Assembly (NCBI GenBank): GCA_002269645.1
Contig: NIVC01000591.1
Span: forward strand, 124,001 to 188,000
DNA from: Macrostomum lignano
Lineage: Eukaryota
Direction of reading: 5' to 3'
Length of the DNA stretch: 64,000 nt
Shown here: one piece after another, positions 21,804 through 60,789 of the stretch
How positions within the stretch are numbered: position 1 is the first letter of the stretch
How the letters are laid out: the number at the start of each line of letters is the position of its first letter
Position numbers and translations under genes: made by a program
The notes under the pieces: generated by a model
Databases searched by the model: none
The model's input: the letters and a program-made list of their open reading frames with translations, nothing else
Told to the model about the DNA's origin: nothing

Positions 21804-23411
21804 TCAACTGGCCAAGTCGAACAGCTGAGGTGCAACACTAACAAGAGCGGCTTCACCAACACGATTCAACAAAGCCATCACCATGGCAACAGCATCGTTG
21901 CTAAGCAAATCAATACCAATCAAAGCCGATCGACTCACTAAAATTGGGGCAGTAAACAAATGAAACAATTTAATGCTACTCTTCAAATTAGTTAATCCGT
22001 TAATCCAATAATTGGGATTATCATCAAATCCGACATGGCCCCTCTGCAAGCTACTGAGCAGTCTGTGCCAGTTTGGCCTACCAACAGCCAGCACTGTGAG
22101 CACAGCTTGAGCAGCAAGGAAAGCGGCCAGCCCAGCATTCGACATGGGCATATGTGGCCGATAAAATTTCCGATAATAAACCAGATAAGGTAGCACAGCT
22201 AGGCAGACAGCTAAACCAATCAGTTCAAGGATGCTGGAGGGATCTGGTGGGAAATACCTGATGCCAGGAGTGAAGCTGTCAGCTGTCTGAAGAATTGCTA
22301 CAGCTGGAGACCTGTTTGATTTCTGTGCAGTCTGGTAGTCTATTAGAGTTCGAAGTTTTTTAACCGAATCCAGTTTGGCCAGGTAGTTGCCGGGCAAAAC
22401 TGCCAACCAGCTGGCGTGGGGGTCAGCTGAGGTCATGGCTGACAGGCACCACAACTGCGACTGGACTCTTGCGCTGGTGCTGCTGCGGTTGCTGCAATAG
22501 AAGTGAAAGCAATATTGGTGATGCGATGCGACTGAATGTGATGAGATGAAGGGATGGTTTACTCTCTCTAATCTCACCTAGTCTCTAGTCTCACCCAGAA
22601 TGTATCTCACTGTTTCTTTAATCTCACCCAGTCTCTAATCTCACTCAGAATGTATCTCATTTTTTCTCTAATCTCAACCTGTTTCTAAACTCACCAGTCT
22701 CTAATCTCACAGTCTCTAATCTCACAAAACCTGTCTCTAATCTTACAGTCTCTAATCTAATCTCATCCTGTCTCTGATCTCACCTAGTCTCTAATCTCAT
22801 CCTGTCTCTAATCTAACCCACTCTCTAATTTTACCTAGTCTCTAATCTCACCCAGTCTCATACCGATATTAAGAATTAAGAGCGAACCTTTTCGAATCAC
22901 CCTGCAGCCGTTTCCTTGGCCCCAGCACAGGCAGCGCGGTGCCCCAGGCGGCAAGGTCGGAGCCCACCACTCCGTCATCGCTGCAGATGAACACCCGCAG
23001 GCTGCCAAATCCGCTACTCTGCTTGGCCTCGAAATTGGCTGACAAGAGCAGAGCGTGAGCAGACCGAGCCAAGCAGCCAGCATCATCAGCTGATGACGTC
23101 AGCAAACCAATGGAGAGATTCTGACCATGATTAGTTTTTCTATTGCTGCTAGACTTGCCAGACAGATAAGACCAGCTGGAACCCGACAGCCGATTAATAA
23201 AATTCCTGGCCTCTAGAGATGCGGCATCAGTATGCCTCTTTGACAATCTTCTATCGCCAATATAATAAGCAGAGCCGGGCATATGACTGCACAGCAATGG
23301 CAGCACAATGCAGAACTGCAGCAGCAGTTGCAGAGTCATAATCCTTGTTGGCAAGCCCATGGTGAAGGTGCGCCACAGCATCTTGTAGGAGAACATCGGC
23401 ATAAACAGCAT
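21804..23411 (-). CDS. PGAP4: PGAP4/TMEM246-like membrane glycosyltransferase-fold protein; exons about 22888-23411 and 21804-22491
   Basis: Colinear similarity to recalled human TMEM246: LLLQFCIVLPLLCSHMPGSAYYIG ~ TFGLLAPLACHRLLHSYFYL; RVFICS ~ QLFLCN; YFPPDPSSILELIGLAV ~ YINPEPMRILEWVGVGM; VLAVGRPNW ~ VELVGRHYF; LLNRVGEAALVSVAPQL ~ LLRAKGERAYVVEPNL. A phase-2 GT-AG intron at 22492-22887 restores the frame. Confidence 0.7.
22575..22860. repeat. Degenerate (AGTCTCTAATCTCAC) minisatellite in the PGAP4-like intron
   Basis: Directly visible. Confidence 0.85.
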
Positions 23412-23458
23412 CGCTCTGCATGCATTACAGATTGACACAAATACTACTGAAATCAGTA

Positions 23459-24402
23459 CTCTTGAAAGGGGAATTGGGAAGACTCTTGAAGGGGAATTAA
23501 GAAGAATCTTGAAGGGGATTTGGGAAGACTCTTCAAGGGGAATTGGGAAGACTCCTAAGAGTAATTTGGGAGACTCTTGAAAGGGGAATAGGGAAGACTC
23601 TTCAAGGGGAATTGGGAAGACTCCTGAGAGGAATTTGGGAGACTCTTAAAGGGGAATTGGGAAGACTCTTGAAAGGGGAATTGGGAAGACTCTTCAAGGG
23701 GAATTGGGAAGACTCTTGAAAGGGGAATTGGGAAGACTCTTCAAGGGGAATTGGGAAGACTCTTCAAGGGGAATTGGGAAGACTCTTGAAAGGGGAATTG
23801 GGAAGACTCTTGAAGGGGAATTGGGAAGTTTCTTGAAGGGGGAATTGGGAAAAATCTTGAAGGGGAATTGGGAAGACTCTTGAAGGGGAATTGGGAAGAC
23901 TCTTGAAGGGGAATTGGGAAGACTCTTGAAAGGGGAATTGGGAAGACTCTTCAAGGGGAATTGGGAAGACTCTTCAAGGGGAATTGGGAAGACTCTTCAA
24001 GGGGAATTGGGAAGACTCTTGAAGGGGAATTGGGAAGTTTCTTGAAGGGGGAATTGGGAAAAATCTTGAAGGGGAATTGGGAAGACTCTTGAAGGGGAAT
24101 TGGGAAGACTCTTGACGGGGAATTGGGAAGACTCTTGAAGGGAATGGGAAGACTCTTGAGGGGGAATTGGGAAGACTCTTGAAGGGGAATTGGGAAGACT
24201 CTTGAAGGGGAATTGGGAAGACTCTTGAAGGGGAATTGGGAAGACTCTTGAAGGGAATGGGAAGACTCTTGAGGGGGAATTGGGAAGACTCTTGAAGGGC
24301 AATTGGGAAGACTCTTGAGGGGGAATTGGGAAGACTCTTGAAGGGGAATTGGGAAGACTCTTGAAGGGGGATTGGGAAGACTCTCGAAGGGTAATTGGGA
24401 AG
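23459..24402. repeat. 23-bp minisatellite (GGGGAATTGGGAAGACTCTTGAA)
   Basis: About 40 tandem copies directly upstream of the PGAP4-like start. Confidence 0.95.
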
Positions 24403-24819
24403 AACACATACAGGCGCGGCAATACTGTACACAGTAACGCACTCATACAGACGCTCACACAGGGTGCACAGCGCGCGCGGCCCTTTGACCTTCTAATCGT
24501 CAGACATGTACAGTACAATACAAGTCAGTAGTACTTAGCGTTTATGTATTGTAATTTTAAAAAGGAAAAATAAGACAACACAAAAACAATAACTAGACTG
24601 AGTAGTAAAATGAAAACACGTGAACTTTTATTTAACGACTCAAACAGACACTTTGGTATTTGGTGTGTTCACCTTTTCAGGCGCAAACATGAGATGTTAG
24701 TTAATAGCTAAATTTTATGGTATTAGGGTTCTTAAACAAATGGTTAGCTAATTTTATCTATGCCATTTCAAACTAACAAGCTGAACACTACAAATAGCAT
24801 TGTAACTTTTCTTAGAAAG

Positions 24820-25070
24820 CCTAGTGCTTAGAGCGTCGGGGGTTCGATTCCCGATCCCATTAGGAACAATTTGTGTCCTTGAGCCAGATACTTATAACTG
24901 TGCATTGCTTCAGTTCACCCAGCTGTAAAATGGGTGCCAGCATTAGCTGGGGTAATTGAGGCTGTGTGTGGCGACCCCCCTCCAGTCCTTGGACTGAACA
25001 GCCGTACGCAGCCTTCAGATGTCGGTTGCACATCTTCCCATTGGGGCAGGTGTATCAAATTATTATTAGT
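24820..25070 (+). mobile_element. tRNA-derived CORE-type SINE
   Basis: A-box-like TAGTGCTTAGAGC, B-box GGTTCGATTCC (24841-24851), CORE-like GTGTCCTTGAGCCAGATACTT...CTTCAGTTCACCCAGCTGTAAAATGGG (compare the MIR core ...CTCAGTTTCCTCATCTGTAAAATGGG), and a short (TTA)n tail. Confidence 0.75.
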
Positions 25071-25188
25071 AACTAAATGAGGATCTTGCATTTAAAGATT
25101 TAGATTTAAGAAAAACTAAAAATATTCATATCTCACTACTCATTACTTGCATAACATATAGTAGTACTAATTCAGACAGACGCAATGT

Positions 25189-25683
25189 TTATTTAACATC
25201 ATCAAAGCTAGGCGCAGACCCAGACTCAATATCCTGGATGAATGATTTATAATAAGCCTCGTATCTCTTGGCGCAGCGCATGACGTCATTGTGCGTGTCC
25301 TCGAATGCCCTCCTAGCATTGGGGTCGTCAAACGCTGAGTCATCTTTCAACAAGCCGTCAATCTGGGCCATAAACTTTCGGAAGTAGAGGCCGCACGGTC
25401 CCGTGACGTACTTGGCCACGCAACCGCAGTGCCAGTTGTAGCTGCCGTCCGGCCGCTTGAACCCCGGCAGGCTGTACTTCGTGTCGATGTCAAAGTAGTT
25501 GGTCATCGACATGGTGGGATAGGCGTCCCGGCGGGACAAGAAGGTGGCCGCGTGAGCGGGACGGTTGGGTCCGCCAGGGATCTGCTTGGACCACGACGGC
25601 CTCTGATCCTCACTAGGCAGCACCGGCGGCTGCTGCTCTGCGACTGGTTCCGCTTTTGTTGCAGTTGCAGGAGATGAAGACAT
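25189..25683 (-). CDS. CHCHD4: MIA40/CHCHD4-like mitochondrial intermembrane-space oxidoreductase, atypical, 164 aa, single coding exon
   Basis: GFKRPDGSYNWHCGCVAKYVTGPCG aligns with MIA40 [25 protein letters not shown]; C-terminal VMRCAKRYEAYY ~ MQECMQKYPDLY. Confidence 0.8.
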   Translation of the reverse strand: MSSSPATATKAEPVAEQQPPVLPSEDQRPSWSKQIPGGPNRPAHAATFLSRRDAYPTMSMTNYFDIDTKYSLPGFKRPDGSYNWHCGCVAKYVTGPCGLYFRKFMAQIDGLLKDDSAFDDPNARRAFEDTHNDVMRCAKRYEAYYKSFIQDIESGSAPSFDDVK

Positions 25684-25704
25684 TTGCTGCAGTCATGAAG
25701 GATC

Positions 25705-26245
25705 GAATTGGGGAGATTCTTGATGGGGATTGGGGAGATTCTTGGAGGAAATTAAGAAGATTCTTGAATGGAATCGGGAAGATTCTTGAAGGGGAGTTGG
25801 GGAGATTCTTGAATGGGAGTTGGGGAGATTCTTGAAGAGAAATTGGGGAGATTCTTGATGGGGATTGGGGAGATTACTGAAGGGAAATTGGGGTGATTCT
25901 TAAAGGGGAATTGGGGAGATTCTTGAAGAGAAATTGGGGATGGGGAGATTCTTTAAGAGAAGTTGGGGAGCTTCTTGAAGAGAAATTGGGGAGATTCTTA
26001 AAAGGGAATTGGGAAGATTCTTAAATGGGAATTGGGAAGATTCTTAAATGGGAATTGGGAAGATTCTTAAATGGGAATTGGGAAGATTCGTAAAGGGGAG
26101 TTAGGGAGATGCTTGAATGGGAATTGGGGAGATTCTTAAAGGGGAGTTGGGGAGATTCCTAAAGAGGAATTAGGGAGATTCTTGAAGGGGATTCGGGGAG
26201 ATTCTTGAAAGGGATTTGGGGAGATTCTTAAAGGGGAATTTTGGA
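25705..26245. repeat. Degenerate ~23-bp minisatellite (GGGAATTGGGGAGATTCTTGAAG), related to 23459-24402
   Basis: Directly visible, upstream of the MIA40-like start. Confidence 0.9.
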
Positions 26246-26510
26246 AATACAAAGATATTAGGAAAAAATAAAATAATTTGATATAACAACAGGAACTGGA
26301 AACATATAAAGGCCTAAAAAAGCATTTTGAACATCTGCAGATCCTTTATTTTATCATTTTTATTTTTGAAAATTTAACTAAAAAGTTTTTAATCTTGTGT
26401 TTTGTTAAAATGCTGAATATTTCATGTATTAATGACATTAAAACGGCAACAACAGTTCCATGCTTAGGAAGTGGCTCGAGCCGATAAATAGGTAGGATTT
26501 GAGAAGCTGG

Positions 26511-26915
26511 AAGTGGCCCAGCAACTCACACTCATGGAGGCTGGATGAGCAACTGAGGATCTGGGAGGCTGGCCCAGCAACTGAGGATCTGGGAGGCTGG
26601 CCCGGCAACTGAGGATCGGGGAGGCTGGCCCAGCAACTGAGGATCTGGGAGGCTGGCCCGGCAACTGAGGATCGGGGAGGCTGGCCCAGCAACTGAGGAT
26701 CTGGGAGGCTGGCCCGGCAACTGAGGATCGGGGAGGCTGGCCCGGCAACTGTGGATCTGGAAGGCTGGTGGCCCAGCAACTGAGGATCTGGGAGGCTGGC
26801 CCAGCAACTGTGGATCTGAAAGGCTGGTGGCCCAGCAACTGAGGATCTGGGAGGCTGGCCCAGCAACTGTGGATCTGAAAGGCTGGTGGCCCAGCAACTG
26901 AGGATCTGAGAGGCT
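26511..26915. repeat. 28-bp minisatellite (GGCCCAGCAACTGAGGATCTGGGAGGCT)
   Basis: About 14 copies, 3' of SMIM12. Confidence 0.92.
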
Positions 26916-27087
26916 GAAAGTTTCATAGTCACGGAACTCAATAAAAACCACTCAACGCACAATTTCACAAAACAACAATACTAAATCTATGGTATTCCTA
27001 CAGCAAAGCCACTAAAAACGTATCATACTACTGCATGGAGAAGTGTAGCACAGTTCAGTAAAAAACGCATTTCCATAAAACACGACA

Positions 27088-27441
27088 TCAAGTCGCTTCC
27101 CCCTTGCCAACTTTATTGAACAGCCTGTTGTAGTCATTCTTATCGAAAATTCTACTGGGAGCAGACGGGGCCAGCGGCTCCAGACCGCCTGCGGATGATG
27201 AGGCTTCAGCGGCAGCAGCTGCAGCTTCCCGAAGCAGTCGCTCGTCTCGTTGATCAGCCACTGACTTGTCTCGGCGGGCCGCTGCCTCCTGCGACTCCAA
27301 ACTCGCTGGCGAGGTGAACAAGCGCTCAGCGTTGTAGCCAATGATGCCGATGACAACGGCGAATGGAAATGCGATTGCGTTGGCAACTGGACCGGCTCGG
27401 GCCATGAAAGTGCGCATCGCTTGCAGGATTAAGGGTAGCAT
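27088..27441 (-). CDS. SMIM12: Small integral membrane protein 12 (UPF0767 family), 117 aa
   Basis: RTF...[16 protein letters not shown] ~ human [37 protein letters not shown] ~ [23 protein letters not shown] ~ APKAVLNRN. Confidence 0.85.
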   Translation of the reverse strand: [117 protein letters not shown]

Positions 27442-27514
27442 TGTTGCTTAGCTGGGACATGAATGGTGACGATATGTATCGAAAATACACATTGAATGAG
27501 TTTAAAATGAAATA

Positions 27515-29320
27515 CAATTGGGATTTTCCTAAATCCTAAATAACCGAAAGAGATTTCCCCAAATTCTGAATAACAGAATGAGATTTCCCCAAATCCCGAA
27601 TACTCAATAGGGATTTCCCCGAATCCTTAATAACCGAATGAGATTTCCCCAAATCCTAAATAACCGAATGGGATTTCCCCAAATCCTGAATACTCAATAG
27701 GGATTTCCCCGAATCCTTAATAACCGAATGGGATTTCCCGGAATCCTAAATAACCGAATGGGATTTCCCCAAATCCTAAATAACCGAATGGGATTTCCCC
27801 GAATCCTAAATAACCGAATGGGATTTTACCAAATCCTAAATAACAGAATAGGATTTCCAAAATTCATAAATAAACTTGAATAATAGGACTTCACCAAATC
27901 CTAAATAACCGAATGGGATTTCCCCAAATCCTGAATACTCAATAGGGATTTCCCCGAATCCTAAATAACCGAATGGGATTTCTCCAAATACTAAATAACC
28001 GAATGAGATTTCCCCAAATCCCGAATACTCAATAGGGATTTCCCCGAATCCTAGTTAACCGAATGGGATTTCCCCAAATCCTAAATAACCGAATGAGATT
28101 TCCCCAAATCCTAAATAACCGAATAGATTTCACCAAATCCTAAATAACCGAATGAGATTTCCACAAATCCTAAATAACCGAATCAATGGGATTTCCTTAA
28201 ATCCTGAATAACCGAATGAGATTTCCCCAAATCCTAAATAATTGAGTGGGATTTCCCCAAATCCTGAATACTCAATAGGGATTTCCCCGAATCCTAAATA
28301 ACCGAATGGGATTTCCCCAAATCCTGAATACTCAATAGGGATTTCTCCGAATCCTAAATAATCGAATGGGATTTCCCCAAATCCTGAATACTCAATAGGG
28401 ATTTCCCCGAATCCTAAATAACCGAATGGGATTTCCCGAATCCTAAATAACCGAATGGGATTTCCCCAAATCCTAAATAACCGAATCAATGGGATTTCCC
28501 CAAATCCTAAATAGCCGAATAGATTTTACCAAATCCTAAATAACCGAATGGGATTTCCCCAAATCCTGAATACTCAATAGGGATTTCTCCGAATCCTAAA
28601 TAACCGAATGGGATTTCCCAAAATCCTGAATACTCAATAGGGATTTCTCCGAATCCTAAATAACCGAATGGGATTTCCCCAAATCCTGAATACTCAATAG
28701 GGATTTCTCCGAATCCTAAATAACCGAATGGGATTTCCCCAAATCCTGAATACTCAATAGGGATTTCTCCGAATCCTAAATAACCGAATGGGATTTCCCC
28801 AAATCCTGAATACTCAATAGGGATTTTCCCGAATCGTAAATAACCGAATGGGATTTCCCCGAATCCTAAATAACCGAATGGGATTTCCCCAAATCCTGAA
28901 TACTCAATAGGGATTTCTCCGAATCCTAAATAACCGAATGGGATTTCCCCAAATCCTGAATACTCAATAGGGATTTCCCCGAATCCTAAATAACCGAATG
29001 GGATTTCCCCAAATCCTAAATAACCGAATGGGATTTCCCCAAATCCTAAATAACCGAATCAATGGGATTTCCCCAAATCCTAAATAGCCGAATAGATTTT
29101 ACCAAATCCTAAATAACCGAATGGGATTTCCCCAAATCCTGAATACTCAATAGGGATTTCTCCGAATCCTAAATAACCGAATGGGATTTCCCCAAATCCT
29201 GAATACTCAATAGGGATTTCCCCGAATCCTAAATAAACGAATGGGATTTCCCCAAATCTTGAATACTCAATAGGGATTTCTCCGAATCCTAAATAACCGA
29301 ATGGGATTTCCGCTAAATCC
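27515..29320. repeat. 30-bp minisatellite (TAACCGAATGGGATTTCCCCAAATCCTAAA) with a 60-bp dimeric higher-order unit
   Basis: About 60 copies. The two subunit types alternate strictly over 28540-28960. Each unit carries an internal GGATTT...AAATCC inverted repeat. Confidence 0.95.
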
Positions 29321-30112
29321 TGCATTTTACCACGGACAAAAAATTAAAACTAGTCAGATTTAGAACAACTGCTAATTAAAGTTTATTTGGCAACAATGAT
29401 CAATGAATTACGATCTTTTAAAGCAATACATAAACATATATATGCATTAAAATTGTTACAAAAAAATTTGTTAAAGGAAGAGGTGTGAAACAAAAAAAAT
29501 TAAGTAACTAGCTAGTAAGTAAAACAAGCACTTCAGCTGCATATCAAAGTGCTTTACGATGGTTTTTGGTATTAAAAAAAAGTGACTGCAAAAATAAGGA
29601 AAACAGAGTAATGACATTGGAACAGAACAATAGCCACAACCACACCCGACACCAGTAACAGCCAACTATGAAAAAAAGATCAACCAACACAAAATTGAAA
29701 GACGATGTTAAAAAAACAAACACAGACTCAAAAAAGGTCCCCGAAGTTCCGTTTGAATTAAAACATAACCAACACAACAGTAAAACAGGGAAGCATTTAT
29801 GTGGAGAGATTTTCAAATTCCACAAACTGGAATAACGATCCTTTTAATTGAAGAATTGAAAATAATAACACAACATATCGGTAGAATGTCTAAAAGCAGG
29901 CAAAACATTTGTGCAGGAAAAAATTAAAATACAATTATTGTCAAGGAAAATAGGACTATATTATTTAATAAATATATCAAATATTATGCGCTTAATTAAG
30001 GAAAACTACAAATTGCAAGAGACTGAAAATCAGCAGCCAACAAACCCGCATGAGTCCAAAACTCATTGCTTGCATACTACTTACTGACAAGCATGTGTTC
30101 GGGCCGCTGTAC

Positions 30113-30708
30113 ATGCATGGGATGCAGGGAGATGCAGGAAGATTTAGGGAGATGTAGGGAGACGCAGGGACATGAAAGAGATGTAGGGAAATGCAGGGAG
30201 ATGTAGTGAGATGCATGGGATGTAGGGAGATGCAGGGAGATGTAGTGAGATGCATGGGATGTAGGGAGATGCAGGGAAATGTAGGGAGATGTATGGGATG
30301 TAGGGAGATGCAGGGAGATGCAGGGAGATGCATGGGATGTAGGGAGATGCATGGGATGTAGAGAGATGCAGGGAGATGCAGGGGATGTAGGGAGATGCAT
30401 GGGATGTAAGGAGATGCATGGGATGTAGGGAGATGCAGGGGATGTAGGGAGATGCATGGGGATGCAGGGAGATGCAGGGAGATGCAGGGAGATGCAGGGA
30501 GATGTAGGGAGATGCATGGGATGTAGGGAGATCGATGGGATGCAGGGAGATGCACGGAAATTCATGGGATGTAGGGAGATGCATGGGATGTAGGGAGATC
30601 CATGGGATGCAGGGAAATACATGGGATGTAGGGACATGCAGGGAGATGTAGGGAGATGCATGGGATGTAGGGAGATCCATGGGATGCAGGGAGATGCAGG
30701 GAGATGAG
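30113..30708. repeat. Minisatellite (GCAGGGAGAT/GCATGGGAT/GTAGGGAGAT), same family as the 12-kb array
   Basis: Directly visible, 3' of the DDHD1 stop. Confidence 0.92.
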
Positions 30709-30867
30709 CATTGTTAGCTTTTAATCTTTAGTATTTCAGCTACCGCAATGACCAAAATTTGTTCATAGATGAAAAAATGAATTTTTGACCGCCAATAAAC
30801 AAGTAAATAAACAAATAAACAAACAAATAAACATTTGCCAGCCCGTCAATCATTGAAACTCAGTCGA

Positions 30868-39229: not shown

Positions 39230-39261
<32 letters not shown>

Positions 39262-41676: not shown

Positions 41677-41715
<39 letters not shown>

Positions 41716-41752
41716 CACAGACACTAAGACAGACAGACAGACAGACAGACAC

Positions 41753-41795
<43 letters not shown>

Positions 41796-41796
41796 A

Positions 41797-41831
<35 letters not shown>

Positions 41832-41930
41832 CACAGACAGACAGACAGACAGACAGACACACAGACACTAAGACAGACAGACAGACAGACAGACACACAG
41901 ACAGACAGACAGACAGACACACAGACACTA

Positions 41931-41971
<41 letters not shown>

Positions 41972-41976
41972 TACAT

Positions 41977-42019
<43 letters not shown>

Positions 42020-42020
42020 A

Positions 42021-42051
<31 letters not shown>

Positions 42052-42052
42052 C

Positions 42053-42091
<39 letters not shown>

Positions 42092-42128
42092 CACAGACAC
42101 TAAGACAGACAGACAGACAGACAGACAC

Positions 42129-42175
<47 letters not shown>

Positions 42176-51100: not shown

Positions 51101-53371
51101 GTCTTATTAGTGCTGACACCGCTACCCTCCTCAGGTCACTCAGTGCACTGACACCGCTATCCTCCTCAGGTCACTCAGTGCACTGACACCGCTATCCTCC
51201 TCAGGTCACTCAGTGCACTGACACCGCTACCCTCCTCAGGTCACTCAGTGCACTGACACCGCTATCCTCCTCAGGTCACTCAGTGCACTGACACCGCTAC
51301 CCTCCTCAGGTCATTCAGTGCACTAGCTGACACCGCTACCCCTCAGGTCTTATTAGTGCTGACACCGCTATCCTCCTCAGGTCATTCAGTGCACTGACAC
51401 CGCTACCCTCCTCAGGTCACTCAGTGCACTGACACCGCTATCCTCCTCAGGTCACTCAGTGCACTGACACCGCTACCCTCCTCAGGTCATTCAGTGCACT
51501 GACACCGCTACCCTCCTCAGGTCACTCAGTGCACTGACACCGCTACCCTCCTCAGGTCATTCAGTGCACTGACACCGCTACCCTCCTCAGGTCTTATTAG
51601 TGCTGACACCGCTACCCTCCTCAGGTCACTCAGTGCACTGACACCGCTACCCTCCTCAGGTCACTCAGTGCACTGACACCGCTACCCTCCTCAGGTCACT
51701 CAGTGCACTGACACCGCTATCCTCCTCAGGTCACTCAGTGCACTGACACCGCTACCCTCCTCAGGTCACTCAGTGCACTGACACCGCTACCCTCCTCAGG
51801 TCACTCAGTGCACTGACACCGCTATCCTCCTCAGGTCATTCAGTGCACTGACACCGCTACCCTCCTCAGGTCATATTAGTGCTGACACCGCTACCCTCCT
51901 CAGGTCATATTAGTGCTGACACCGCTACCCTCCTCGGGTCTTATTAGTGCTGACACCGCTACCCTCCTCAGGTCATATTAGTGCTGACACCGCTACCCTC
52001 CTCAGGTCACTCAGTGCACTGACACCGCTACCCTCCTCAGGTCACTCAGTGCAGTGACACCGCTACCCTCCTCAGGTCACTCAGTGCACTGACACCGCTA
52101 CCCTCCTCAGGTCACTCAGTGCAGTGACACCGCTACCCTCCTCAGGTCACTCAGTGCACTGACACCGCTACCCTCCTCAGGTCACTCAGTGCAGTGACAC
52201 CGCTACCCTCCTCAGGTCACTCAGTGCAGTGACACCGCTACCCTCCTCAGGTCATTTAGTGCAGTGACACCGCTACCCTCCTCAGGTCACTCAGTGCACT
52301 GACACCGCTACCCTCCTCAGGTCACTCAGTGCAGTGACACCGCTACCGTCCTCAGGTCTTATTAGTGCTGACACCGCTACCCTGATGATATTTAATAGGT
52401 AAATACGGTCAGAGTAATTAAAAAAACAAATAGGAATTCTGTGTAAACGTCATATTACATGCTACTACAAGTAGGTATTTATAAATGAATTCAGATATGC
52501 TATCATCAAGGTGGCTAATATTGCAATCAATCAAACTACACTAATTTTAAACTTTTACCTGACCAATAGATTGGCCGACAACTTCTAGCCGCGATGTCAG
52601 CTTCAAACAGGCCACCCCGAACTAGGATCTTCTCCGTGTGGCTGTCGCCGCTGCCACCAGTAGCTGGAGCTGCGGCTGCGGCACCAGCGGCAGTGCACAA
52701 GAGTTCGCGGTGTTTGCACTCTAATCTCAGCGAATCGTAGCCATTAAATGGCAGCCATTTTTTCTCGCCTTCCTCTTGGTAGAACCAGCGGATCTGGGAT
52801 TGTAGTAGGCGCTTTTTGTTTATGCAGCTTTTTAGGGGCGATTGTGAGGCCATTATAAGGGCAATTCTTAGGCCTATTTAATGGCGATTCTTAGGCCTAT
52901 TTAAGGGCGATTCTTAGGCTTATTTAAGGGCGATTCTTAGGCCTATTTAAGGGCGATTCTAAGGCCTATTTAAGGGCGATTCTTAGGCCTATTTAAGGGC
53001 GATTCTTGGGCCTTCATAGGGACGATTTTTAGGTCACTATAAGAGCGATTTTAGACTTTCATAAGTACGATGTTTAGACCAATATTCACCTCTTCCGGTC
53101 GCAGCTCGGCAACGCAGTCGTTAGCCGGATACAGTGGATTAGTCATGGCTCGCCTATTAATCCTAGCAGCTGCAGCCGCGTACTCCGGGTTATTTGTAGT
53201 CGATGAAGCAGTGGATGACACATCCTCAGAGGAGAAGGACAAAGCATCGTAATCGCGCAGGTAGGGATCTGTAGATGCGCTAGTCAGTGGGTCAATGCCT
53301 CTGTAGCGGCACTGGTCTCTGTAAGACAGGCCTTCGCGTTCCGTTAGCTGCACCTCGGAAGAGTCTGCCAT
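30868..53371 (-). CDS. DDHD1: DDHD1-like phosphatidic-acid-preferring phospholipase A1; exons 53090-53371, 52559-52793, 46396-46602, 43031-43399, 42248-42546, 41422-41489, 41275-41353, 39942-40091, 39045-39438, (37655-37723 candidate), 30868-31385
   Basis: All junctions are GT-AG with compatible phases. Motifs: ELRPEE|[57 protein letters not shown], lipase [43 protein letters not shown]|AYRLEPL, and C-terminal RLDYQL...SHTAYW (DDHD domain). Confidence 0.93.
31405..31900. repeat. (CAGATAATCA/CATAATCA) minisatellite next to the last DDHD1 acceptor
   Basis: Directly visible. Confidence 0.93.
32638..32858 (+). repeat. 5' LTR (221 bp)
   Basis: Identical to the 3' LTR except (TC)9 versus (TC)7; contains AATAAA. 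Confidence 0.95.
32860..32874 (+). other. Primer-binding site complementary to the tRNA-Ser(GCU) 3' end; overlaps the gag ATG
   Basis: TGGCGACGAGGATGG is the reverse complement of ...CCATCCTCGTCGCCA, the recalled tRNA-Ser(GCT) 3' end. Confidence 0.7.
32871..36812 (+). CDS. Gag-Pol polyprotein interrupted by a single in-frame TAG at 34782-34784
   Basis: Two CCHC knuckles ([28 protein letters not shown]), protease IDTGA, RT FIDD, RNase H (ECDSS, YSQTEKE), integrase HHCC plus RIHMDY/SDNG/NGLAE. ORFs 32871-34784 and 34797-36812 share a frame (offset 1926 = 642 codons). Confidence 0.93.
36911..37127 (+). repeat. 3' LTR (217 bp)
   Basis: Matches the 5' LTR; preceded by the polypurine tract. Confidence 0.95.
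37994..38930. repeat. Purine-rich minisatellite (GGGAGAGAGGGAGATGGGA-like), intronic
   Basis: Directly visible; polypyrimidine on the DDHD1 sense strand. Confidence 0.93.
39517..39880. repeat. 26-bp minisatellite (GAGGATATGGGAGATTTCCCTGACAT), intronic
   Basis: About 14 copies. Confidence 0.92.
40255..40765. repeat. 70/71-bp minisatellite (GGCAGTGTACATTCAGCCAGTTAGAATAGCC...CGCATCAATCCA), intronic
   Basis: About 7 copies. Confidence 0.92.
41570..42235. repeat. (AGAC)n compound microsatellite, intronic
   Basis: Directly visible. Confidence 0.95.
42595..42995. repeat. 23-bp minisatellite (TTATGAGCAGTCATTCTGATGGT), intronic
   Basis: Directly visible. Confidence 0.88.
43420..44380. repeat. 39-bp minisatellite (GAGTGACAAGATGGGATTTTGGGATGAATCGCTCTCCCA), intronic
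   Basis: About 24 copies. Confidence 0.94.
44905..46155. repeat. (GTCA)n/(GTGG) compound tetranucleotide array, intronic
   Basis: Directly visible. Confidence 0.95.
46745..47810. repeat. 30-bp minisatellite (CTGAACAATTCCCCTCGAGTCATTGAGTAT), intronic
   Basis: About 35 copies. Confidence 0.95.
48800..52382. repeat. 35-bp minisatellite (CTGACACCGCTACCCTCCTCAGGTCATTTAGTGCA), 3.6 kb, intronic
   Basis: About 100 copies with ordered variant blocks; no spacers. Confidence 0.96.
52855..53040. repeat. 23-bp minisatellite (TTAAGGGCGATTCTTAGGCCTAT), DDHD1 intron 1
   Basis: About 8 copies. Confidence 0.9.
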
Positions 53372-53499
53372 CCAGATTTGATTTATGGACTGACTATGCC
53401 AAACCGTGCAGATGATGAGTTATTGCACTGGGCATTGGGAGCAGAAATTGAAGCATAGGGGCTTGCTTAATGTCAATTTATGGGATCGAATTAAGGTGT

Positions 53500-55555
53500 G
53501 GCGTAACTGGGTGGTGTTAGATAGGGAAACTATAGATAATGGGATGTTAGATAAGGAATATGGGATAATTAAAGGTGCTAGATAAGGGAACATGGGATAA
53601 TTAGGGGTGTTAGATAAGGGGACATGGGATAATTAGGGGTGTTAGATAAGGGGACATGGGATAATTGGGGGGGGGTGTTAGATAAGGGGACATGGGATAA
53701 TTGGGGGTGTTAGATAAGGGAACGTGGGATAATTTGGGGTGTTATTTAAGAGAGCATGGGATAATTAGGGATGTTAGATAAGGGGACATGGGATAATTGG
53801 GGGGGTGTTAGATAAGGTGACATGGGATAATTAGGGGTGTTAGATAAGGTGACATGGGATAATTAGGGGTGTTAGATAAGAGAACATGGGATAACTATGG
53901 GTGTTAGATAAGGGAACATGGGATAATTAGGGGTGTTAGATAAGGGAACATGGGATAACTATGGGTGTTAGATAAGGGAACATGGGATAATTAGGGGTGT
54001 TAGATAAGGTGACATGGGGATAATTAGGGGTGTTAGATAAGGGAACATGGGATAATTAGGGGTGTTGGATAAGGGGACATGGGATAACTATGGGTGTTAG
54101 ATAAGGGAACATGGGATAATTAGGGGTGTTAGATAAGGTGACATGGGGATAATTAGGGGTGTTAGATAAGAGAACATGGGATAACTATGGGTGTTAGATA
54201 AGGTGACATGGGGATAATTAGGGGTGTTAGATAAGGGAACATGGGATAATTAGGGGTGTTAGATAAGGGGACATGGGATAACTATGGGTGTTAGATAAGG
54301 GAACATGGGATAATAAGGGGTGTTAGATAAGGTGACATGGGGATAATTAGGGGTGTTAGATAAGGGAACATGGGATAATTAGGGGTGTTAGATAAGAGAA
54401 CATGGGATAACTATGGGTGTTAGATAAGGGAACATGGGATAACTATGGGTGTTAGATAAGAGAACATGGGATAACTATGGGTGTTAGATAAGGGAACATG
54501 GGATAATTGGGGGTGTTAGATAAGGGAACATGGGATAATTGGGGGTGTTAGATAAGAGAACATGGGATAACTATGGGTGTTAGATAAGGGAACATGGGAT
54601 AACTATGGGTGTTAGATAAGGGAACATGGGATAACTATGGGTGTTAGATAAGAGAACATGGGATAATTAGGGGTGTTAGATAAGGGAACATGGGATAACT
54701 ATGGGTGTTAGATAAGAGAACATGGGATAACTATGGGTGTTAGATAAGGTGACATGGGATAATTAGGGGTGTTAGATAAGGGAACATGGGATAATTGGGG
54801 GTGTTAGATAAGGGAACATGGGATAATTGGGGGTGTTAGATAAGAGAACATGGGATAACTATGGGTGTTAGATAAGGGAACATGGGATAACTATGGGTGT
54901 TAGATAAGAGAACATGGGATAACTATGGGTGTTAGATAAGGTGACATGGGATAATTAGGGGTGTTAGATAAGGGAACATGGGATAATTGGGGGTGTTAGA
55001 TAAGGGAACATGGGATAATTGGGGGTGTTAGATAAGAGAACATGGGATAACTATGGGTGTTAGATAAGGGAACATGGGATAACTATGGGTGTTAGATAAG
55101 AGAACATGGGTAACTATGGGTGTTAGATAAGGGAACATGGGATAATTGGGGGTGTTAGATAAGGGAACATGGGACAATTAGGGGTGTTAGACAAGTGAAT
55201 ATGGGATAATTGGGGGTGTTAGACAAGGGAACATGGGATAATTAGGGATGTTAGATAAGGGAACTTTGGATAATGGGGTGTTAGATAAGGGAATATGGGA
55301 TAATTAAAGGTGCTAGATAAGGGAACATGGGATAATTAGGGGTGTTAGATAAGGGGACATGGGATAATTGGATAATTGGGGGTGTTAGATAAGAGAGCAT
55401 GGGATAATTAGGGGTGTAAGATAAGGAAATATGGGATAATTGGGGGTGTTATATAAGGGAATATGGGATAATTAGGGGTGTTAGATAAGGAAACATGGGA
55501 TAATTAGGGGTGTTAGATAAGGGAACATGAGATAATTGGGGGTGTTAGATAATAG
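53500..55555. repeat. 32-bp minisatellite (GTTAGATAAGGGAACATGGGATAATTAGGGGT) filling the DDX52-DDHD1 intergenic region
   Basis: About 64 copies. Confidence 0.95.
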
Positions 55556-55726
55556 CTATATGGGCTAGATAAATACAAAAATAATTGACAATAATTGTCG
55601 AAATAATTCAATTTGAAAATGCTAGAAGATTCAAGCAGAAAATGCCTTGTACTTAAAGAGTGACAAATTTACTGCAAATTCTCAAATTCATTAGAACTAT
55701 CAAGGGTCCAGCACAGTCCTGAAGTC

Positions 55727-58700
55727 TCAAGCAGACACCGCCTCTTTGGCTCTGGCCTTGGCCTTGGCTTTGCGAATTTTTCGTCTGGCTTTCTTGGCGT
55801 CGCGAACATCGCGACGTTTTCGGTTGACCGCGCGAACTCCGCCGAACACGTGGCCCCGGCCTGCGGCCTGTTCAGCCTTTGATCTTGCCGACTCTTGCGC
55901 CTGTTCCGACTGCTTCTTGTGCTTTGCTTGCTTGTTTCCTGATTGCTGCTGCTGCTGCCTTGGTGGACGGCGTCGGTTTGAGTTGCTTGGCAACAGAGCG
56001 TACAAGTCGGGATTCACCTGTTGAAGGGGTTTTAAGGAATGAAAATGTTATTATCGTGATTCCTGTACATTCCGATCTTGTGAATATGATTAGGGATCTT
56101 GTGAATTTGATTAAGGATCTTGTGAATATGATTAGGGATCTTGTGAATATGATTAAGGATCTTGTGAATCTGATTAGCGTTTTTATGAATATGATTAGGG
56201 ATCTTGTGAATTTGATTAAGGATCTAGTGAATATGATTAGGGATCTTGTGAATTTGATTAAGGATCTAGTGAATATGATTAGGGATCTTGTGAATTTGAT
56301 TAAGGATCTTGTGAATATGATTAGGGATCTTGTGAATTTGATTAAGGATCTTGTGAATTTGATTAAGGATCTTGTGAATTTGATTAAGGATCTTGTGAAT
56401 TTGATTAAAGATCTTGTGAATCTGATAAGGGATCTTGTGAATCTCATTTAGGATCTTGTGAATCTGATTAGGGTTCTTATGAATATGATTAGGGATCTTG
56501 TGAATTTGATTAAGGATCTTGTGAATATGATAAGGGATCTTGTGAATATGATTAGGGATCTTGTGAATCTGATTAGGGATCTTGTGAATCTGATTAATTT
56601 TCTTGTGACTCAATTAGGGATCCTAATAATCCGATTAGGGATCCTGATAATCCGATTAGGGATCCTGATAATCCGATTAGGGATCCTGATAATCCGATTA
56701 AGGATCCTGATAATCCTATTAGGGATCCTGATAATCCGATTAGGGATCCTGATAATCCGATTAGGGATCCTGATAATCCCAATAGGGATCCTGATAATCC
56801 GATTAGGGATCCTGATAATCCCATTAGGGATCCTGATAATCCGATTAAGGATCCTGATAATCCAATTTGGGATAATAATTATTAAAATCCCACCTGGCAA
56901 CCGCTGTTCTTCATCACCGCCAGCACAGGTCTGAGATTAGGCAGATCCCGCTTCTCCCACAGGCTGACGGCCAGACCCCGACGGCCGGCCCTGCCGCAGC
57001 GGCCAATGCGATGAATGTACTCTCGGCTAGCCGTCGGCAGATCGTAATTAATCACCATAGCAACGCTGGGAAAGTCCATACCGCGAGCCATCAGGTCTGT
57101 ACTGACCAAAGCCGGTAGGCGACCTTCGCGAAATTTGCGTAGCAGTTTGTCTCGCGTCTCCTGAGGCCTGCCGGCGGTCACCGAGTCCACCTGGAGGCCC
57201 TGGTCCCTCAGCAGCTGGCACAGCTCGCTTGCTCGCTGCCGAGTGTGCACGAATATCAGCAGGGGGTACTGCAGGTCGCCTCGGGCGAACATAGTCTTGA
57301 TCTCGTGAGCTTTGCCTGCGATGAGATTGACGGTGATGAGATTAGATATGATTAAAGATACGATTAGAGGGTGAAATCAGATTGGAGTTGATTGAGATGG
57401 AAGGTGAGATTAGATAAGAGAATACCTGAGAGATGTAGAGCGAGATTAGATTGGAAACGCTTGAGATCGAGGATGAGATTGGATTGAAGATTTTAGATTT
57501 TAGGGTGGGATTAGATCTGAGATGCTTCTCAGGTGGAGGGTAAGAGTAGATAATACATGTTTGGGATGGAGGATAAGATTAGATAAGAGATGCTTGAGAT
57601 GAAGGATGAGATTAGAGAAGACATGCTTGATGTGGAGGATGAGATTAGATTAAAGATGTCCGGGATGGACAGTGAGATTAGATTATAGAAGAGAATGTGC
57701 TCAAGATGGTGAGATTAGATAAGAGATGCTTGATGTGGAGGATGAGATTAGATAAGAGATGCTTGATGTGGAGGATGAGATTAGATAAGAGATTCTTGAT
57801 GTGGAGGATGAGATTAGATAAGAGATGCTTGATGTGGAGGATGAGATTAGATAAGAGATATTTGATGTGGAGAATTAGATTAGTAAGAAATGCTTAGGAT
57901 GGGGGTGAGATTTTTGTAGTTTAGAGATACTCGAGATAGAAAGTTGGTAAAACTAGATTTACGATAATGAGAAAGAAGAATCAAGAGTTGATAAAAAAGA
58001 CAAGCCTTGATTACCAGCTTCATTAGAGCAGAACACCAGTTTCTGGTCAATAGTGTTGGTGGCCGCCTGCTTCGGTCCAACACGCACAATGGCCAGGCGG
58101 TCGAAATTCTCGCGGCAGAACTGCTCCACTGCCGGGTGGGCCGTGGCGCTTAACAGGGCGCGGGACAGCTGGGGGTGGCCGCATCTGGAGTGTTGGGTAG
58201 GGGCGAGGGGCGTCGTTTATTGTTGAGGAGTTTCGTCGTATTTTTAGGATAACTGTTCGGTCTACCAACATTCCCTGTCTACCCATGCCACTACTCTGCA
58301 CGCCTCCAGTCTGCAAACCCCTACTCTGCCCACCCCTGCTCTGCACACCCCTGCTCTGCACGCCCTTACTCTGCACGCCCCTGCTCTGCACACCCCTGCT
58401 CTGCACACCCCTACTCTGCACACCCCTGCTCTGCACACTCCTGCTCTGCACACCCCTGCTCTGCACGCCCTTACTGTGCACGCCCCTACTCTGCACACCC
58501 CTGCTCTGCACACCCCTGCTCTGCACACCCCTGCTCTGCACACCCCTACTCTGCACACCCCTGCTCTGCACACCCCTGCTCTGAACGCCCTTACTCTGCA
58601 CGCCCCTGCTCTGCACACCCCTGCTCTGCACACCCCTACTCTGCACACCCCTGCTCTGCACACCCCTGCTCTGCACACCCCTGCTCTGCACACCCCTGCT

Positions 58701-60631
58701 CTGCACACCCCTACTCTGCACGCCTTTACTCTGCACACCCCTGCTCTGCACACCCCTGCTCTGCACGCCCTTATTGTGCACACCCCTGCTCTGCACACCC
58801 CTACTCTGCACGCCCTTACTCTGCACACCCCTGCTCTGCACACCCTTGCTCTGCACGCCCTTACTCTGCACACCCCTACTCTGCACACCCCTGTTCTGCA
58901 CACCCCTGCTCTGCACACCCCTGCTCTGCACACCCCTGCTCTGCACGCCCTTATTGTGCACACCCCTGCTCTGCACACCTCTACTCTGCACGCCCTTACT
59001 CTGCACACCCCTGCTCTGCACACCCCTACTCTGCACACCCCTGCTCTGCACACCCCTACTCTGCACGCCTTTACTCTGCACACCCCTACTCTACACACCC
59101 CTACTCTGCACGCCCTACTCTGCACACCCCTACTCCGCACGCCCCTACTCTGCACAAACCTGGAGCAGATGGCTCCTAATTGGTCGGCAAATCCCCGAGG
59201 TCCTTCATCGCGCAGCAGCCGGTCGGCTTCATCCAGCACCAGGTAGCGCACCGAGTCCAATCCCTCCGCTTGCAGCGGCCCGCCCGCGGTCAGCAGATGC
59301 ACCAGACGCTGAGGCGTTGACACCAGCATGTCGGCGCTGCGAACCTGTTCAACAGCGGCAGTCTGGCCCGAGTCGCCGTCAATATCCGAGGTGAGCAGTC
59401 GGACTCGATAGTCTGGCAGACCCTGCACCAGCTGCTTGGCACTGTGAACTACCTGGCAGTGAGTCAGACAAAATAATAATAAGACCACTAAATATTGTAC
59501 TGGGAAAAATAGGCCCAATACTAAATTTATTGGGCCACTGTATCTTCCACTACCTCAAAGGGGTTGGCAAACTTTTGTACTTTAGGGGCCAGATAAAGAA
59601 TCCAGCTCATGGCTTCGGGCCAGATAAGAGAAGATATGAAGCGAGAGATATGAAAAGAGAAAAGATAGAAGTGGAGAGAAGAGGGAGAAAATAAGAGAGC
59701 GGAGAGCTTAGAGAGGGGAGAGAGTAGAGAGAGGGGAGAGGAGAGAAGAGAGAAGAGGAGAGAATAGAGGGAGAGGACGGAGAGGAGAGGAGAGTGTAGA
59801 GAGGAGATAGGAGGGGAGAGAGGGAGAAGAGAGATGAGAGAGGGAGAAGAGAGATGAGAGAGATGAAAGAGGGGAGAAGAGAGAGGAGACAGGAGAGAGG
59901 GGAGAAGGGAGAGGAGAGATAGGGAGGGGAGAGTAGAGAGAGAGAGGGAAGAGAGAGGAGACAGGAGAGATGAGAGAGGAGAGAAAGAAGAGAGAAGGGA
60001 AAGGGGACTAGGAGAGGAGAGAAGAGAAGAGACACAAACCTTGAGCGGGGTGGACTGCAATTGTGAAGCTTCAAAGAACCCAAGGGCCGGGCCTCGAGTG
60101 AGGCTTCGAGGGCTGAATGTGACACGCGAGTCGGAGTTTGCCAACCCCTGCTCTATCCAATTATAGGACCACTGCATTTTCCAACCTGAAGTTACCAACC
60201 TGTTTAGCCAGATCAACAGTAGGCAGCAACACCAGCGCTGCTGGCTTATTCCTTGCACCGCTAGCATTATCGGCAACCAAGTTGGACTGATCAATCCAAG
60301 TTTTAGCCACAATAGGCAGCAGGTAAGCCAGTGACTTGCCACTACCAGTTGGTGCATAGGCCAGTACATTCCTGGACTGCATTAGCACTGGTACGCATTG
60401 CATTTGAATCGGTGTGGGCTCCTGATACTGCAGTCTGACAGTGATATTATGCAACAGTTTAGTTGGCAAGCCAAGGCTGCTAAACATTGAATCGAAATTC
60501 TCTTCAGGCTGAGGAATCTCATCGCCAACAACGCGAATATAGTGGCGCTTGCGCAGGCCTTCAATTGCACTCATACTACTACTAGTAGCATTGGCAGTAG
60601 TAGACAATTTTGAGTAAGTTTTGTTTTTCAT
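55727..60631 (-). CDS. DDX52: DEAD-box RNA helicase DDX52/ROK1; exons 60200-60631, 59160-59452, 58015-58184, 56894-57315, 55727-56017
   Basis: Q-motif PTPIQ, Walker [71 protein letters not shown] and [19 protein letters not shown] are ROK1-like. Phase-compatible GT-AG introns. An extra 5' exon cannot be excluded. Confidence 0.92.
56070..56872. repeat. Two adjacent 21-bp minisatellites (GATCTTGTGAATTTGATTAAG; GGATCCTGATAATCCGATTAG), last DDX52 intron
   Basis: Arrays at 56070-56600 and 56620-56872. Confidence 0.93.
57320..57900. repeat. Degenerate 33-bp minisatellite (GATGAGATTAGATAAGAGATGCTTGATGTGGAG), DDX52 intron
   Basis: Directly visible. Confidence 0.85.
58288..59155. repeat. 15-bp minisatellite (CTCTGCACACCCCTG), DDX52 intron
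   Basis: About 58 copies abutting the donor at 59159. Confidence 0.95.
59635..60035. repeat. GA-rich low-complexity tract, DDX52 intron 1
   Basis: Directly visible. Confidence 0.9.
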
Positions 60632-60789
60632 GTCTGACCAATGAGTCTCATGAAATTGGTAGCTCAACACAAGTTAAAATGTCCGCTGGTGTTGTCCTGT
60701 GTTTTCAATATTGCCAATGCTAAAAAACTGTCACTCAGAAATTGGTCGAGGTAAGTAAGCCACATTGCTGTAATGAACTGACCCTCATT

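What the first reader, a model, noticed from the sequence alone, without database searches (positions are those of the whole stretch)
21804..60635. Candidate SL trans-spliced operon: DDX52 > DDHD1 > SMIM12 > MIA40-like > PGAP4-like
Five functionally unrelated housekeeping genes lie head-to-tail on the minus strand, 1.4-3.4 kb apart. The spacers are mostly tandem repeat, with no obvious GC-rich promoter like the one before the CCCH genes. Each ATG is closely preceded by an acceptor-like CAG: GGTCAG|acATG (2 nt), TAGTCAG|18 nt, GTCCCAG|10 nt, CTGCAG|caaATG (3 nt), ATGCAG|agcgATG (4 nt). That is the pattern expected for spliced-leader trans-splicing and polycistronic transcription, both known in flatworms. 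An operon whose intercistronic regions are inflated by satellites would be unusual. Caveat: a YAG near an ATG can arise by chance or from 5'-UTR introns.
Basis: inference. Interest (0 to 1): 0.7.

Follow-up and report, generated by a model that had tools for sequence, protein, structure and literature searches.

The report
Known-type flatworm spliced-leader gene cluster
This is a run of five same-strand genes in the flatworm Macrostomum lignano, an ordinary case of the repeat-inflated spliced-leader operons already described for this species; only the last three genes have indirect published support for being one transcript.

Summary
The window is Macrostomum lignano Mlig_3_7, contig NIVC01000591.1. 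Five minus-strand genes (DEAD-box helicase/DDX52-like, DDHD1, SMIM12/UPF0767, MIA40-like, an unverified "PGAP4-like" gene) lie 1.4-3.4 kb apart. The spacers are 53-87% tandem repeat, and every quoted CAG-ATG context is exact.

The unusual-looking part is already published. [quoted passage not shown] Repeats are known to inflate intercistronic distances, and operons are called at under 1 kb after repeat subtraction. Here the non-tandem spacer lengths are 315, 1029, 465 and 831 nt.

In two paralogous loci the NCBI locus tags place SMIM12, MIA40-like and PGAP4-like under one transcriptional-unit prefix. DDX52 carries a different prefix, and SMIM12 is numbered g1, so the annotation implies three units, not one.

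Tandem arrays fill 13 of 14 introns too, so they do not mark spacers.

No RNA reads could be examined.

One unexplained extra: CATG, the SL's last four bases, lies 0-5 nt before the acceptor AG in 4 of 5 genes.

The parts
55727..60646 (-). DDX52-like DEAD-box helicase gene. Five coding exons: 60631-60200, 59452-59160, 58184-58015, 57315-56894, 56017-55727. The likely SL acceptor is catgAG|ACT, exon start 60646.
   Evidence: The exon model reproduces UniRef A0A1I8H0I4 exactly. Pfam DEAD and Helicase_C. NCBI CDS 60643..55727, 539 aa, 5'-partial, starts HWSD; paralogues start THWSD.
53372..55726 (-). Spacer 1, DDX52 stop to DDHD1 ATG: 2355 nt, of which 2040 nt is a 32-nt tandem array (53513-55552, 63 copies). 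No AATAAA or ATTAAA.
   Evidence: In paralogue L006 the same array has only 25.6 copies and the spacer is 1138 nt.
30868..53371 (-). DDHD1 phospholipase gene. My 10-exon model: 53371-53090, 52793-52559, 46602-46396, 43399-43031, 42546-42248, 41489-41422, 41353-41275, 40091-39942, 39438-39045, 31385-30868 (866 aa). The annotated product is 896 aa.
   Evidence: Orthologues are named phospholipase DDHD1. The annotated CDS starts at 53371. Neither my 866-aa model nor an 896-aa variant matched the database exactly.
32639..37127 (+). Young LTR retroelement inserted antisense in the last DDHD1 intron. It is not part of the operon question.
   Evidence: Pfam zinc knuckle, aspartyl protease, RT, RNase H and integrase on ORFs 32871-34784 and 34797-36812. 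100% identical direct repeats at 32700-32859 and 36969-37128. Absent from paralogue L003, where the flanking 32-nt array is continuous.
27442..30867 (-). Spacer 2, DDHD1 stop to SMIM12 ATG: 3426 nt, of which 2397 nt is tandem (30113-30706 and the 30-nt array 27519-29321). Candidate acceptor tcccAG|CTA, exon start 27451.
27088..27441 (-). SMIM12 (UPF0767), single exon, 117 aa.
   Evidence: PF15990, E 1.8e-12. The exact protein is in NCBI for this contig. Paralogues are named Mlig023451g1 and Mlig018815g1.
25684..27087 (-). Spacer 3, SMIM12 stop to MIA40-like ATG: 1404 nt, of which 939 nt is tandem (26514-26916 and 25705-26240). Candidate acceptor ctgcAG|CAA, exon start 25686; it matches [T/C]TNCAG. 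The array ends 18 nt before it.
25189..25683 (-). MIA40-like gene, single exon, 164 aa. It has CGC in place of CPC and an incomplete twin Cx9C.
   Evidence: PDB 2k3j, E 1.1e-4, over residues 63-106. No Pfam hit. The paralogue is Mlig023451g2, partial, starting LQQM.
23412..25188 (-). Spacer 4, MIA40-like stop to PGAP4-like ATG: 1777 nt, of which 946 nt is a 23-nt array (23458-24403). Candidate acceptor atgcAG|AGCG, exon start 23415.
21804..23417 (-). 'PGAP4-like' membrane protein gene, two exons (23417-22888 and 22491-21804). The annotated product is 405 aa, 5'-partial, starting RAM. The family assignment is unverified.
   Evidence: The model matches PAA80272.1/PAA53721.1 (Mlig023451g4, partial) exactly. 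No Pfam, PDB or outside homologues.

Best explanation
The locus is a head-to-tail run of SL trans-spliced genes in Macrostomum lignano, of the type already catalogued for this species. RNA polymerase II reads through several genes, and through the tandem arrays between them, just as it reads through the arrays inside their introns. Each downstream mRNA is released by 3' cleavage and polyadenylation of the upstream gene and by addition of the 35-nt SL (ending in AUG) at an AG a few to a few tens of nt before its start codon. SMIM12, MIA40-like and PGAP4-like are most likely one such polycistron. This rests on the published annotation of paralogous copies, not on reads seen here. DDX52 and DDHD1 are probably also trans-spliced, at sites slightly upstream of those proposed. 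Whether they are made from the same primary transcript is inferred only from strand, order and short non-repeat spacing. The tandem arrays are neutral filler, not a functional part.
For: - Source genome and contig identified.
- Published facts for this species: one 35-nt SL; 30% of genes trans-spliced; 15% in operons; repeats inflate intergenic distances specifically between trans-spliced genes; operon threshold 1 kb after repeat subtraction.
- Transcriptional units are cut into genes at SL and poly(A) signals, and this is reflected in the MligNNNNNN.gN names.
- Unrelated genes share a unit prefix in two paralogous loci: Mlig023451 g1, g2, g4 and Mlig018815 g1, g2.
- Non-tandem spacer lengths are 315, 1029, 465 and 831 nt including UTRs.
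- Only 18-123 nt of unique sequence lies between each array and the candidate acceptor, which leaves little room for a promoter.
- Annotated CDSs of DDX52, PGAP4-like and the paralogous MIA40-like gene are 5'-partial and begin 2-5 codons before the Met. This is as expected when the mRNA 5' end is set by an SL site close to the ATG.
- An older gene model (P0005) fuses DDHD1, SMIM12 and MIA40-like. Calvelo et al. 2025 treat such chimeras as a signature of polycistronic pre-mRNA.
- 13 of 14 introns carry arrays of up to 4.6 kb, so arrays are compatible with transcription and processing.
- No annotated gene lies within 10 kb upstream of DDX52 or 6.6 kb downstream of PGAP4-like.
Against: - No RNA evidence was seen directly. 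No Logan or transcript contigs carry these proteins.
- The annotation splits the region into at least three units: DDX52 has its own prefix and SMIM12 is g1 of its unit.
- The DDHD1 unit name could not be recovered.
- Units that span tandem arrays could be assembly artefacts, because reads were multi-mapped (up to 1000 locations allowed).
- The unit names come from paralogous copies; the names for the window's own SMIM12 and MIA40-like genes are hidden.
- Annotated 5' ends do not fall exactly after an AG for PGAP4-like or for the paralogous MIA40-like gene.
- Only 1 of 5 sites fits the published acceptor motif.
- The DDHD1-to-SMIM12 non-repeat distance is at the edge of the 1-kb threshold.
- About 60% of trans-spliced genes in this species are not in operons.
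Confidence: 0.6

Rival explanations
1. Each gene, or each of three units, has its own promoter in or next to the tandem arrays. Each primary transcript is monocistronic, with an outron that is removed by SL trans-splicing. The head-to-tail order is incidental.
For: - About 60% of SL trans-spliced M. lignano genes are not in operons.
- The annotation gives DDX52 and DDHD1 units separate from SMIM12.
- Spacers are 1.4-3.4 kb, and the DDHD1-to-SMIM12 spacer keeps about 1 kb of non-repeat sequence, including a 791-nt unique block at 29322-30112.
- Parasitic flatworms often use internal promoters that create outrons.
Against: - SMIM12, MIA40-like and PGAP4-like share a unit prefix in two paralogous loci.
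- Unique sequence between array and acceptor is only 18-123 nt.
- The non-repeat spacer segments are AT-rich and UTR-like.
- The authors themselves note that units tend to break in repeat-rich spacers, so separate units do not show separate promoters.
Confidence: 0.3
2. The AGs near the ATGs are chance matches or acceptors of cis-spliced 5'-UTR introns. The genes are conventionally capped, with no SL addition.
For: - A CAG 2-18 nt upstream occurs at 27-32% of arbitrary ATGs.
- Only one site matches [T/C]TNCAG.
- Flatworm SL acceptors are often shared with cis-splicing.
Against: - The 5'-partial CDSs begin a few codons before the Met in DDX52, PGAP4-like and the paralogous MIA40-like gene. This places transcript ends right at these sites, and the pipeline that set the gene boundaries (TBONE) says it used only SL and poly(A) read evidence to do so.
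- Genes could only have been cut from a shared unit at SL or poly(A) peaks.
- Conserved genes are strongly enriched among SL targets in this species.
Confidence: 0.07

Closest known systems
Macrostomum lignano SL operons (Wudarski et al. 2017, PMC5730564; Ustyantsev & Berezikov 2021, PMC8629364)
   Same: Same organism and same single 35-nt SL. Same-strand conserved housekeeping genes, with intergenic distances inflated by simple repeats that collapse below 1 kb once the repeats are subtracted. Three of the genes already share a transcriptional-unit prefix in the public annotation of paralogous copies.
   Different: Nothing in kind. Five genes would be at the large end: 93% of the operons have 2-3 genes and the maximum is 9. 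The annotation supports only a three-gene unit.
Caenorhabditis elegans operons
   Same: Polycistronic pre-mRNA of functionally unrelated genes, resolved by 3' end formation coupled to SL trans-splicing.
   Different: C. elegans intercistronic regions are about 100 nt and downstream genes receive a specialised SL2. Here the spacers are 1.4-3.4 kb (0.3-1.0 kb without repeats) and the species has a single SL.
Polycistrons of parasitic flatworms (Protasio 2012; Calvelo et al. 2025, PMC12582326)
   Same: An SL ending in AUG, no SL specialisation, a UUNYAG-type acceptor, and chimeric gene models as a trace of polycistronic precursors. Some intergenic distances reach several kb.
   Different: Those candidates were mostly defined at 300 nt or less. 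None of these gene families appears in that paper's supplementary tables, so conservation of this cluster is unknown.

Membership tests
M. lignano SL operon (operational definition of Ustyantsev & Berezikov 2021) | Immediately adjacent genes on the same strand, not interrupted by an opposite-strand transcript | tested here: met
   Five consecutive minus-strand CDSs. The recovered accessions PAA80272 (PGAP4-like) and PAA80276 (DDX52) bracket them, which leaves exactly three numbers for the three genes between. No other gene is called between them. The only plus-strand coding element is a retroelement inside a DDHD1 intron.
M. lignano SL operon (operational definition of Ustyantsev & Berezikov 2021) | Intergenic distance below 1000 bp after subtracting simple repeats and transposable elements | tested here: met
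   Stop-to-ATG minus TRF arrays gives 315, 1029, 465 and 831 nt. Because these include both UTRs, transcript-to-transcript distances are shorter. The DDHD1-to-SMIM12 pair is borderline. RepeatMasker-type repeats could not be subtracted.
M. lignano SL operon (operational definition of Ustyantsev & Berezikov 2021) | The downstream gene of each pair carries the SL (SL-containing RNA-seq reads at its 5' end) | not testable with these tools
   No RNA reads or transcripts were reachable. The evidence is indirect only: 5'-partial CDS starts for DDX52, PGAP4-like and the paralogous MIA40-like gene, and genes cut out of shared units.
Polycistronic transcription unit (any SL operon) | One primary transcript spans consecutive genes | tested here: inconclusive
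   SMIM12, MIA40-like and PGAP4-like share a unit prefix in loci L003 and L004. DDX52 has another prefix, and SMIM12 is g1 of its unit. The DDHD1 name was not recovered. An older chimeric model fuses DDHD1, SMIM12 and MIA40-like.
M. lignano SL acceptor | [T/C]TNCAG directly at the exon start (present at 44% of annotated SL sites) | tested here: inconclusive
   Only CTGCAG|CAA (MIA40-like) matches. TCCCAG, ATGCAG, GGTCAG or CATGAG, and AGTCAG or GCCCAG do not. The motif is not obligatory.
C. elegans-type operon | Intercistronic region of about 100 nt and a dedicated SL2 for downstream genes | tested here: not met
   Spacers are 1.4-3.4 kb. M. lignano has a single SL.

The most novel reading that the evidence does not exclude
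The tetranucleotide CATG is the palindromic last four bases of the SL exon. It lies 0-5 nt upstream of the candidate trans-splice AG in 4 of 5 genes:
- DDX52: tttCATG-AG|ACT
- SMIM12: ttCATG-TCCC-AG|CTA
- MIA40-like: ttCATG-ACTGC-AG|CAA
- PGAP4-like: tgCATG-C-AG|AGC

The upstream DDHD1 acceptor has aATG-CCC-AG|. If this pattern is general, an outron CAUG could pair with the CAUG at the 3' end of the SL exon and hold the leader next to the 3' splice site. That would resemble an exon-binding/intron-binding contact and would be a new specificity element for SL trans-splicing.
Probability: 0.08. Interest if true: 0.6.

Novelty: already known. Interest (0 to 1): 0.15.

Why it matters
It matters little beyond annotation. 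It shows that a sequence-only reader can recognise an SL operon. However, both the phenomenon and its repeat-inflated spacers were described genome-wide for this species in 2017-2021, and the public annotation already groups three of the genes. Two things are useful:
- Two proposed acceptors are corrected.
- Tandem arrays are shown to fill introns and spacers alike, and they vary 2.5-fold in copy number between paralogous copies. This argues that they are neutral filler which transcription tolerates.

The CATG-before-AG regularity is the only point that could lead somewhere new, and it rests on five sites.

Tried and rejected
- Direct transcript evidence. Exact-protein look-ups for SMIM12, MIA40-like, DDX52 and their paralogues returned only the NCBI genome contigs and no RNA-seq assemblies. 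Two Logan contigs reached through DDHD1 homologues come from unidentified other samples and were not informative.
- Homology searches with DDX52 exon 1 and with the PGAP4-like protein gave no useful named relatives.
- DDHD1 unit name. I rebuilt the gene (866 aa) and a variant with a 90-nt extra exon at 44536-44447 (896 aa). Neither is in the collection.
- Gene-level tables. The supplements of Wudarski 2017, Grudniewska 2018 and Calvelo 2025 hold none of these gene ids or names, and no paper mentions the ids.
- Relic SL copies upstream of the genes ('recycled cDNA'). Similarity to the SL does not extend beyond CATG; alignment scores rank at 20-80% among all CATG sites.
- Satellites derived from the SL. 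The best alignment of the SL to any array unit is no better than for a shuffled SL (P = 0.25).
- No SL RNA gene or SL copy in the window.
- GC-rich promoter criterion. It is not discriminating, because the region upstream of DDX52 is not GC-rich either.
- Hidden genes. None was found in the 791-nt unique block of spacer 2 or upstream of DDX52.


Full report
Source. Exact-protein look-ups place the window on Macrostomum lignano Mlig_3_7 (GCA_002269645.1), contig NIVC01000591.1. Record position equals window position plus 124000, in the same orientation. The window is 55% tandem repeat. Rfam finds nothing in it, and it contains no copy of the spliced leader.

Checking the observation. I built gene models on the minus strand.
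- DDX52-like: five exons. The 535-aa product is identical to UniRef A0A1I8H0I4 and has DEAD and Helicase_C domains.
- DDHD1: ten exons between 53371 and 30868. Homologues elsewhere are named phospholipase DDHD1.
- SMIM12: single exon, PF15990.
- MIA40-like: single exon. It aligns to human MIA40 only around the redox motif, with CGC in place of CPC (E 1.1e-4).
- 'PGAP4-like': two exons. My 405-aa model matches PAA80272.1/PAA53721.1 exactly, but I could not verify the family name.

Stop-to-ATG spacers are 2355, 3426, 1404 and 1777 nt, of which 87%, 70%, 67% and 53% is tandem array. The description is therefore correct.

Two of its supporting arguments are weak.
- A CAG 2-18 nt upstream is found at 27-32% of arbitrary ATGs in the non-tandem part of the window. 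Only one site fits the published acceptor motif.
- Tandem arrays are not a spacer feature. 13 of the 14 introns of these genes also contain them, up to 4.6 kb in one intron.

The absence of a GC-rich promoter is also uninformative, because the sequence upstream of the first gene is not GC-rich either.

What is already known. Wudarski et al. 2017 mapped SL-containing reads to this assembly and found that about 7% of assembled transcripts are precursors with several SL sites. They introduced 'transcriptional units' that are cut into genes at SL and poly(A) signals by the TBONE pipeline. Similar units share a name prefix. Ustyantsev & Berezikov 2021 reported several further points:
- The SL is 35 nt long and ends in ATG.
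- 30% of genes are trans-spliced and 15% are in operons.
- The acceptor motif is [T/C]TNCAG.
- Subtracting simple repeats and transposable elements changes the distance distribution mainly between trans-spliced genes, giving a main peak near 100 bp. From this they conclude that repeats contribute substantially to intergenic distances in operons, and they set a 1-kb repeat-adjusted threshold.

At this locus the non-tandem spacer lengths, UTRs included, are 315, 1029, 465 and 831 nt. The cluster therefore meets that distance criterion, with the DDHD1-to-SMIM12 pair at the edge.

Evidence from the annotation. Names for the window's own single-exon proteins are hidden. Paralogous copies of the locus (L003, L004, L006, L009) are 92-97% identical, arrays included, and their names are shown.
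- L004: SMIM12 is Mlig023451g1, MIA40-like is Mlig023451g2 and PGAP4-like is Mlig023451g4.
- L003: SMIM12 is Mlig018815g1 and PGAP4-like is Mlig018815g2.

Unrelated genes can share a prefix only if at least one assembled unit spanned them. This is indirect but specific support for a SMIM12, MIA40-like, PGAP4-like polycistron.

By contrast, the window's DDX52 is Mlig009826g1 and its paralogues are Mlig021325g1 and g2. SMIM12 is numbered g1 in both of its units. The annotation therefore implies three units: DDX52, DDHD1, and the last three genes. I could not recover the DDHD1 name. The authors warn that units tend to break in repeat-rich spacers, so separate units do not disprove co-transcription. 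Conversely, units that bridge arrays might be helped by multi-mapped reads. An older UniParc model (P0005) fuses DDHD1, SMIM12 and MIA40-like. Calvelo et al. 2025 treat such chimeras as traces of polycistronic precursors.

Acceptor positions.
- DDX52: the NCBI CDS of the window copy is 5'-partial and starts HWSD at 60643. The paralogues start THWSD. Only that site puts the SL AUG in frame with the ORF.
- DDHD1: the CDS starts at its Met, although the frame stays open for 16 codons upstream. The annotated 5' end must therefore lie upstream of the in-frame TAA at 53422-53420. The Y-rich acceptor ctcccaatgcccAG|TGC at about 53427 fits better than 53389.
- PGAP4-like: the CDS starts RAM, at 23417.
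- Paralogous MIA40-like: the CDS starts LQQM.

These last two 5' ends lie 2-8 nt upstream of the proposed AGs, so the exact junctions remain unsettled. No RNA data could be reached to settle them.

Mechanism. The best reading is the standard one. Transcription runs through genes and arrays alike. Upstream mRNAs are cleaved and polyadenylated, and downstream ones receive the SL at an AG close to the start codon. The arrays abut the acceptors, leaving 18-123 nt of unique sequence and little room for promoters. The DDX52-to-DDHD1 array has 63 copies here and 26 in paralogue L006, with conserved flanks, which suggests neutral expansion. Polycistronic transcription of the last three genes is inferred from the annotation. 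Including the first two genes is inference from arrangement only. The main rival is independent promoters with outron trans-splicing.

An unexplained regularity. CATG, the last four bases of the SL and a palindrome, lies 0-5 nt upstream of the candidate acceptor AG in four of the five genes. The upstream DDHD1 acceptor has ATG-CCC-AG.
- Only 2.3% of control ATGs in non-tandem window sequence have CATG.{0,5}AG within 25 nt upstream (P of about 1e-6 for 4 of 5, post hoc).
- None of the 14 cis acceptors has it.
- Similarity to the SL does not extend further, and the satellites are not SL-like.
- In parasitic flatworms no second motif was found near SL acceptors.
- The annotated 5'-partial CDS starts of the DDX52 paralogues, PGAP4-like and the paralogous MIA40-like gene (where the tetramer is CCTG) are compatible with boundaries placed right after this tetramer; the window's own DDX52 start is not. 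Boundary-calling details may therefore be involved, but that would not explain the genomic sequence itself.

With five sites from one locus this is only a lead. It needs the genome-wide count.

Verdict. The kind of feature is already described for this organism, so interest is low.

Noticed in passing
window 60649-60652, 27457-27460, 25694-25697, 23419-23422 (minus strand): CATG, identical to the 3' end of the SL exon, lies 0-5 nt upstream of the candidate trans-splice AG in 4 of 5 genes. The background rate is about 2%, and 0 of 14 cis acceptors show it. It is mutated to CCTG in paralogue L004.
   Followed up: partly
window 32639-37127 (+): LTR retroelement with gag-like, protease, RT, RNase H and integrase ORFs and 100% identical terminal repeats. 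It is inserted antisense into the last DDHD1 intron, inside a 32-nt tandem array. It is absent from paralogue L003, so the insertion is very recent.
   Followed up: partly
window 4915-17092: A single 12-kb array of a 29/58-nt G-rich unit (about 420 copies) with extreme GC skew (0.74). Related ATGCAGGGAG-type arrays recur at 287-527, 3663-4431, 20478-20694 and 30113-30706.
   Followed up: no
window about 17200-18900 (minus strand): Tandem CCCH zinc fingers of the TIS11/ZFP36 type are visible in the translation, downstream of the cluster on the same strand. A 58% GC block lies at 18252-18891. No CDS is called there in the look-up tables.
   Followed up: no
introns of DDX52, DDHD1 and PGAP4-like, e.g. 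58294-59156, 48801-52383, 22564-22859: 13 of 14 introns consist largely of a different tandem array each. Array copy number differs between paralogous copies; the 32-mer at 53513-55552 has 63 copies here and 26 in L006.
   Followed up: partly
P0005 (UniParc UPI0007A219AA), maps to window 43397-25201: An older 738-aa gene model fuses DDHD1, SMIM12 and MIA40-like into one protein. It reads part of the MIA40-like 5' region in another frame and is a mis-annotation.
   Followed up: partly
window 44447-44536 (minus strand): The annotated DDHD1 product is 896 aa and my model is 866 aa. One 90-nt candidate exon with good splice signals would make up the difference, but the resulting protein is not the annotated one.
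   Followed up: partly
window 61425-63127 (+): Several plus-strand ORFs upstream of DDX52, including a weak C2H2-finger match. They may be remnants of a mobile element. No annotated gene lies within 10 kb upstream of DDX52.
   Followed up: partly
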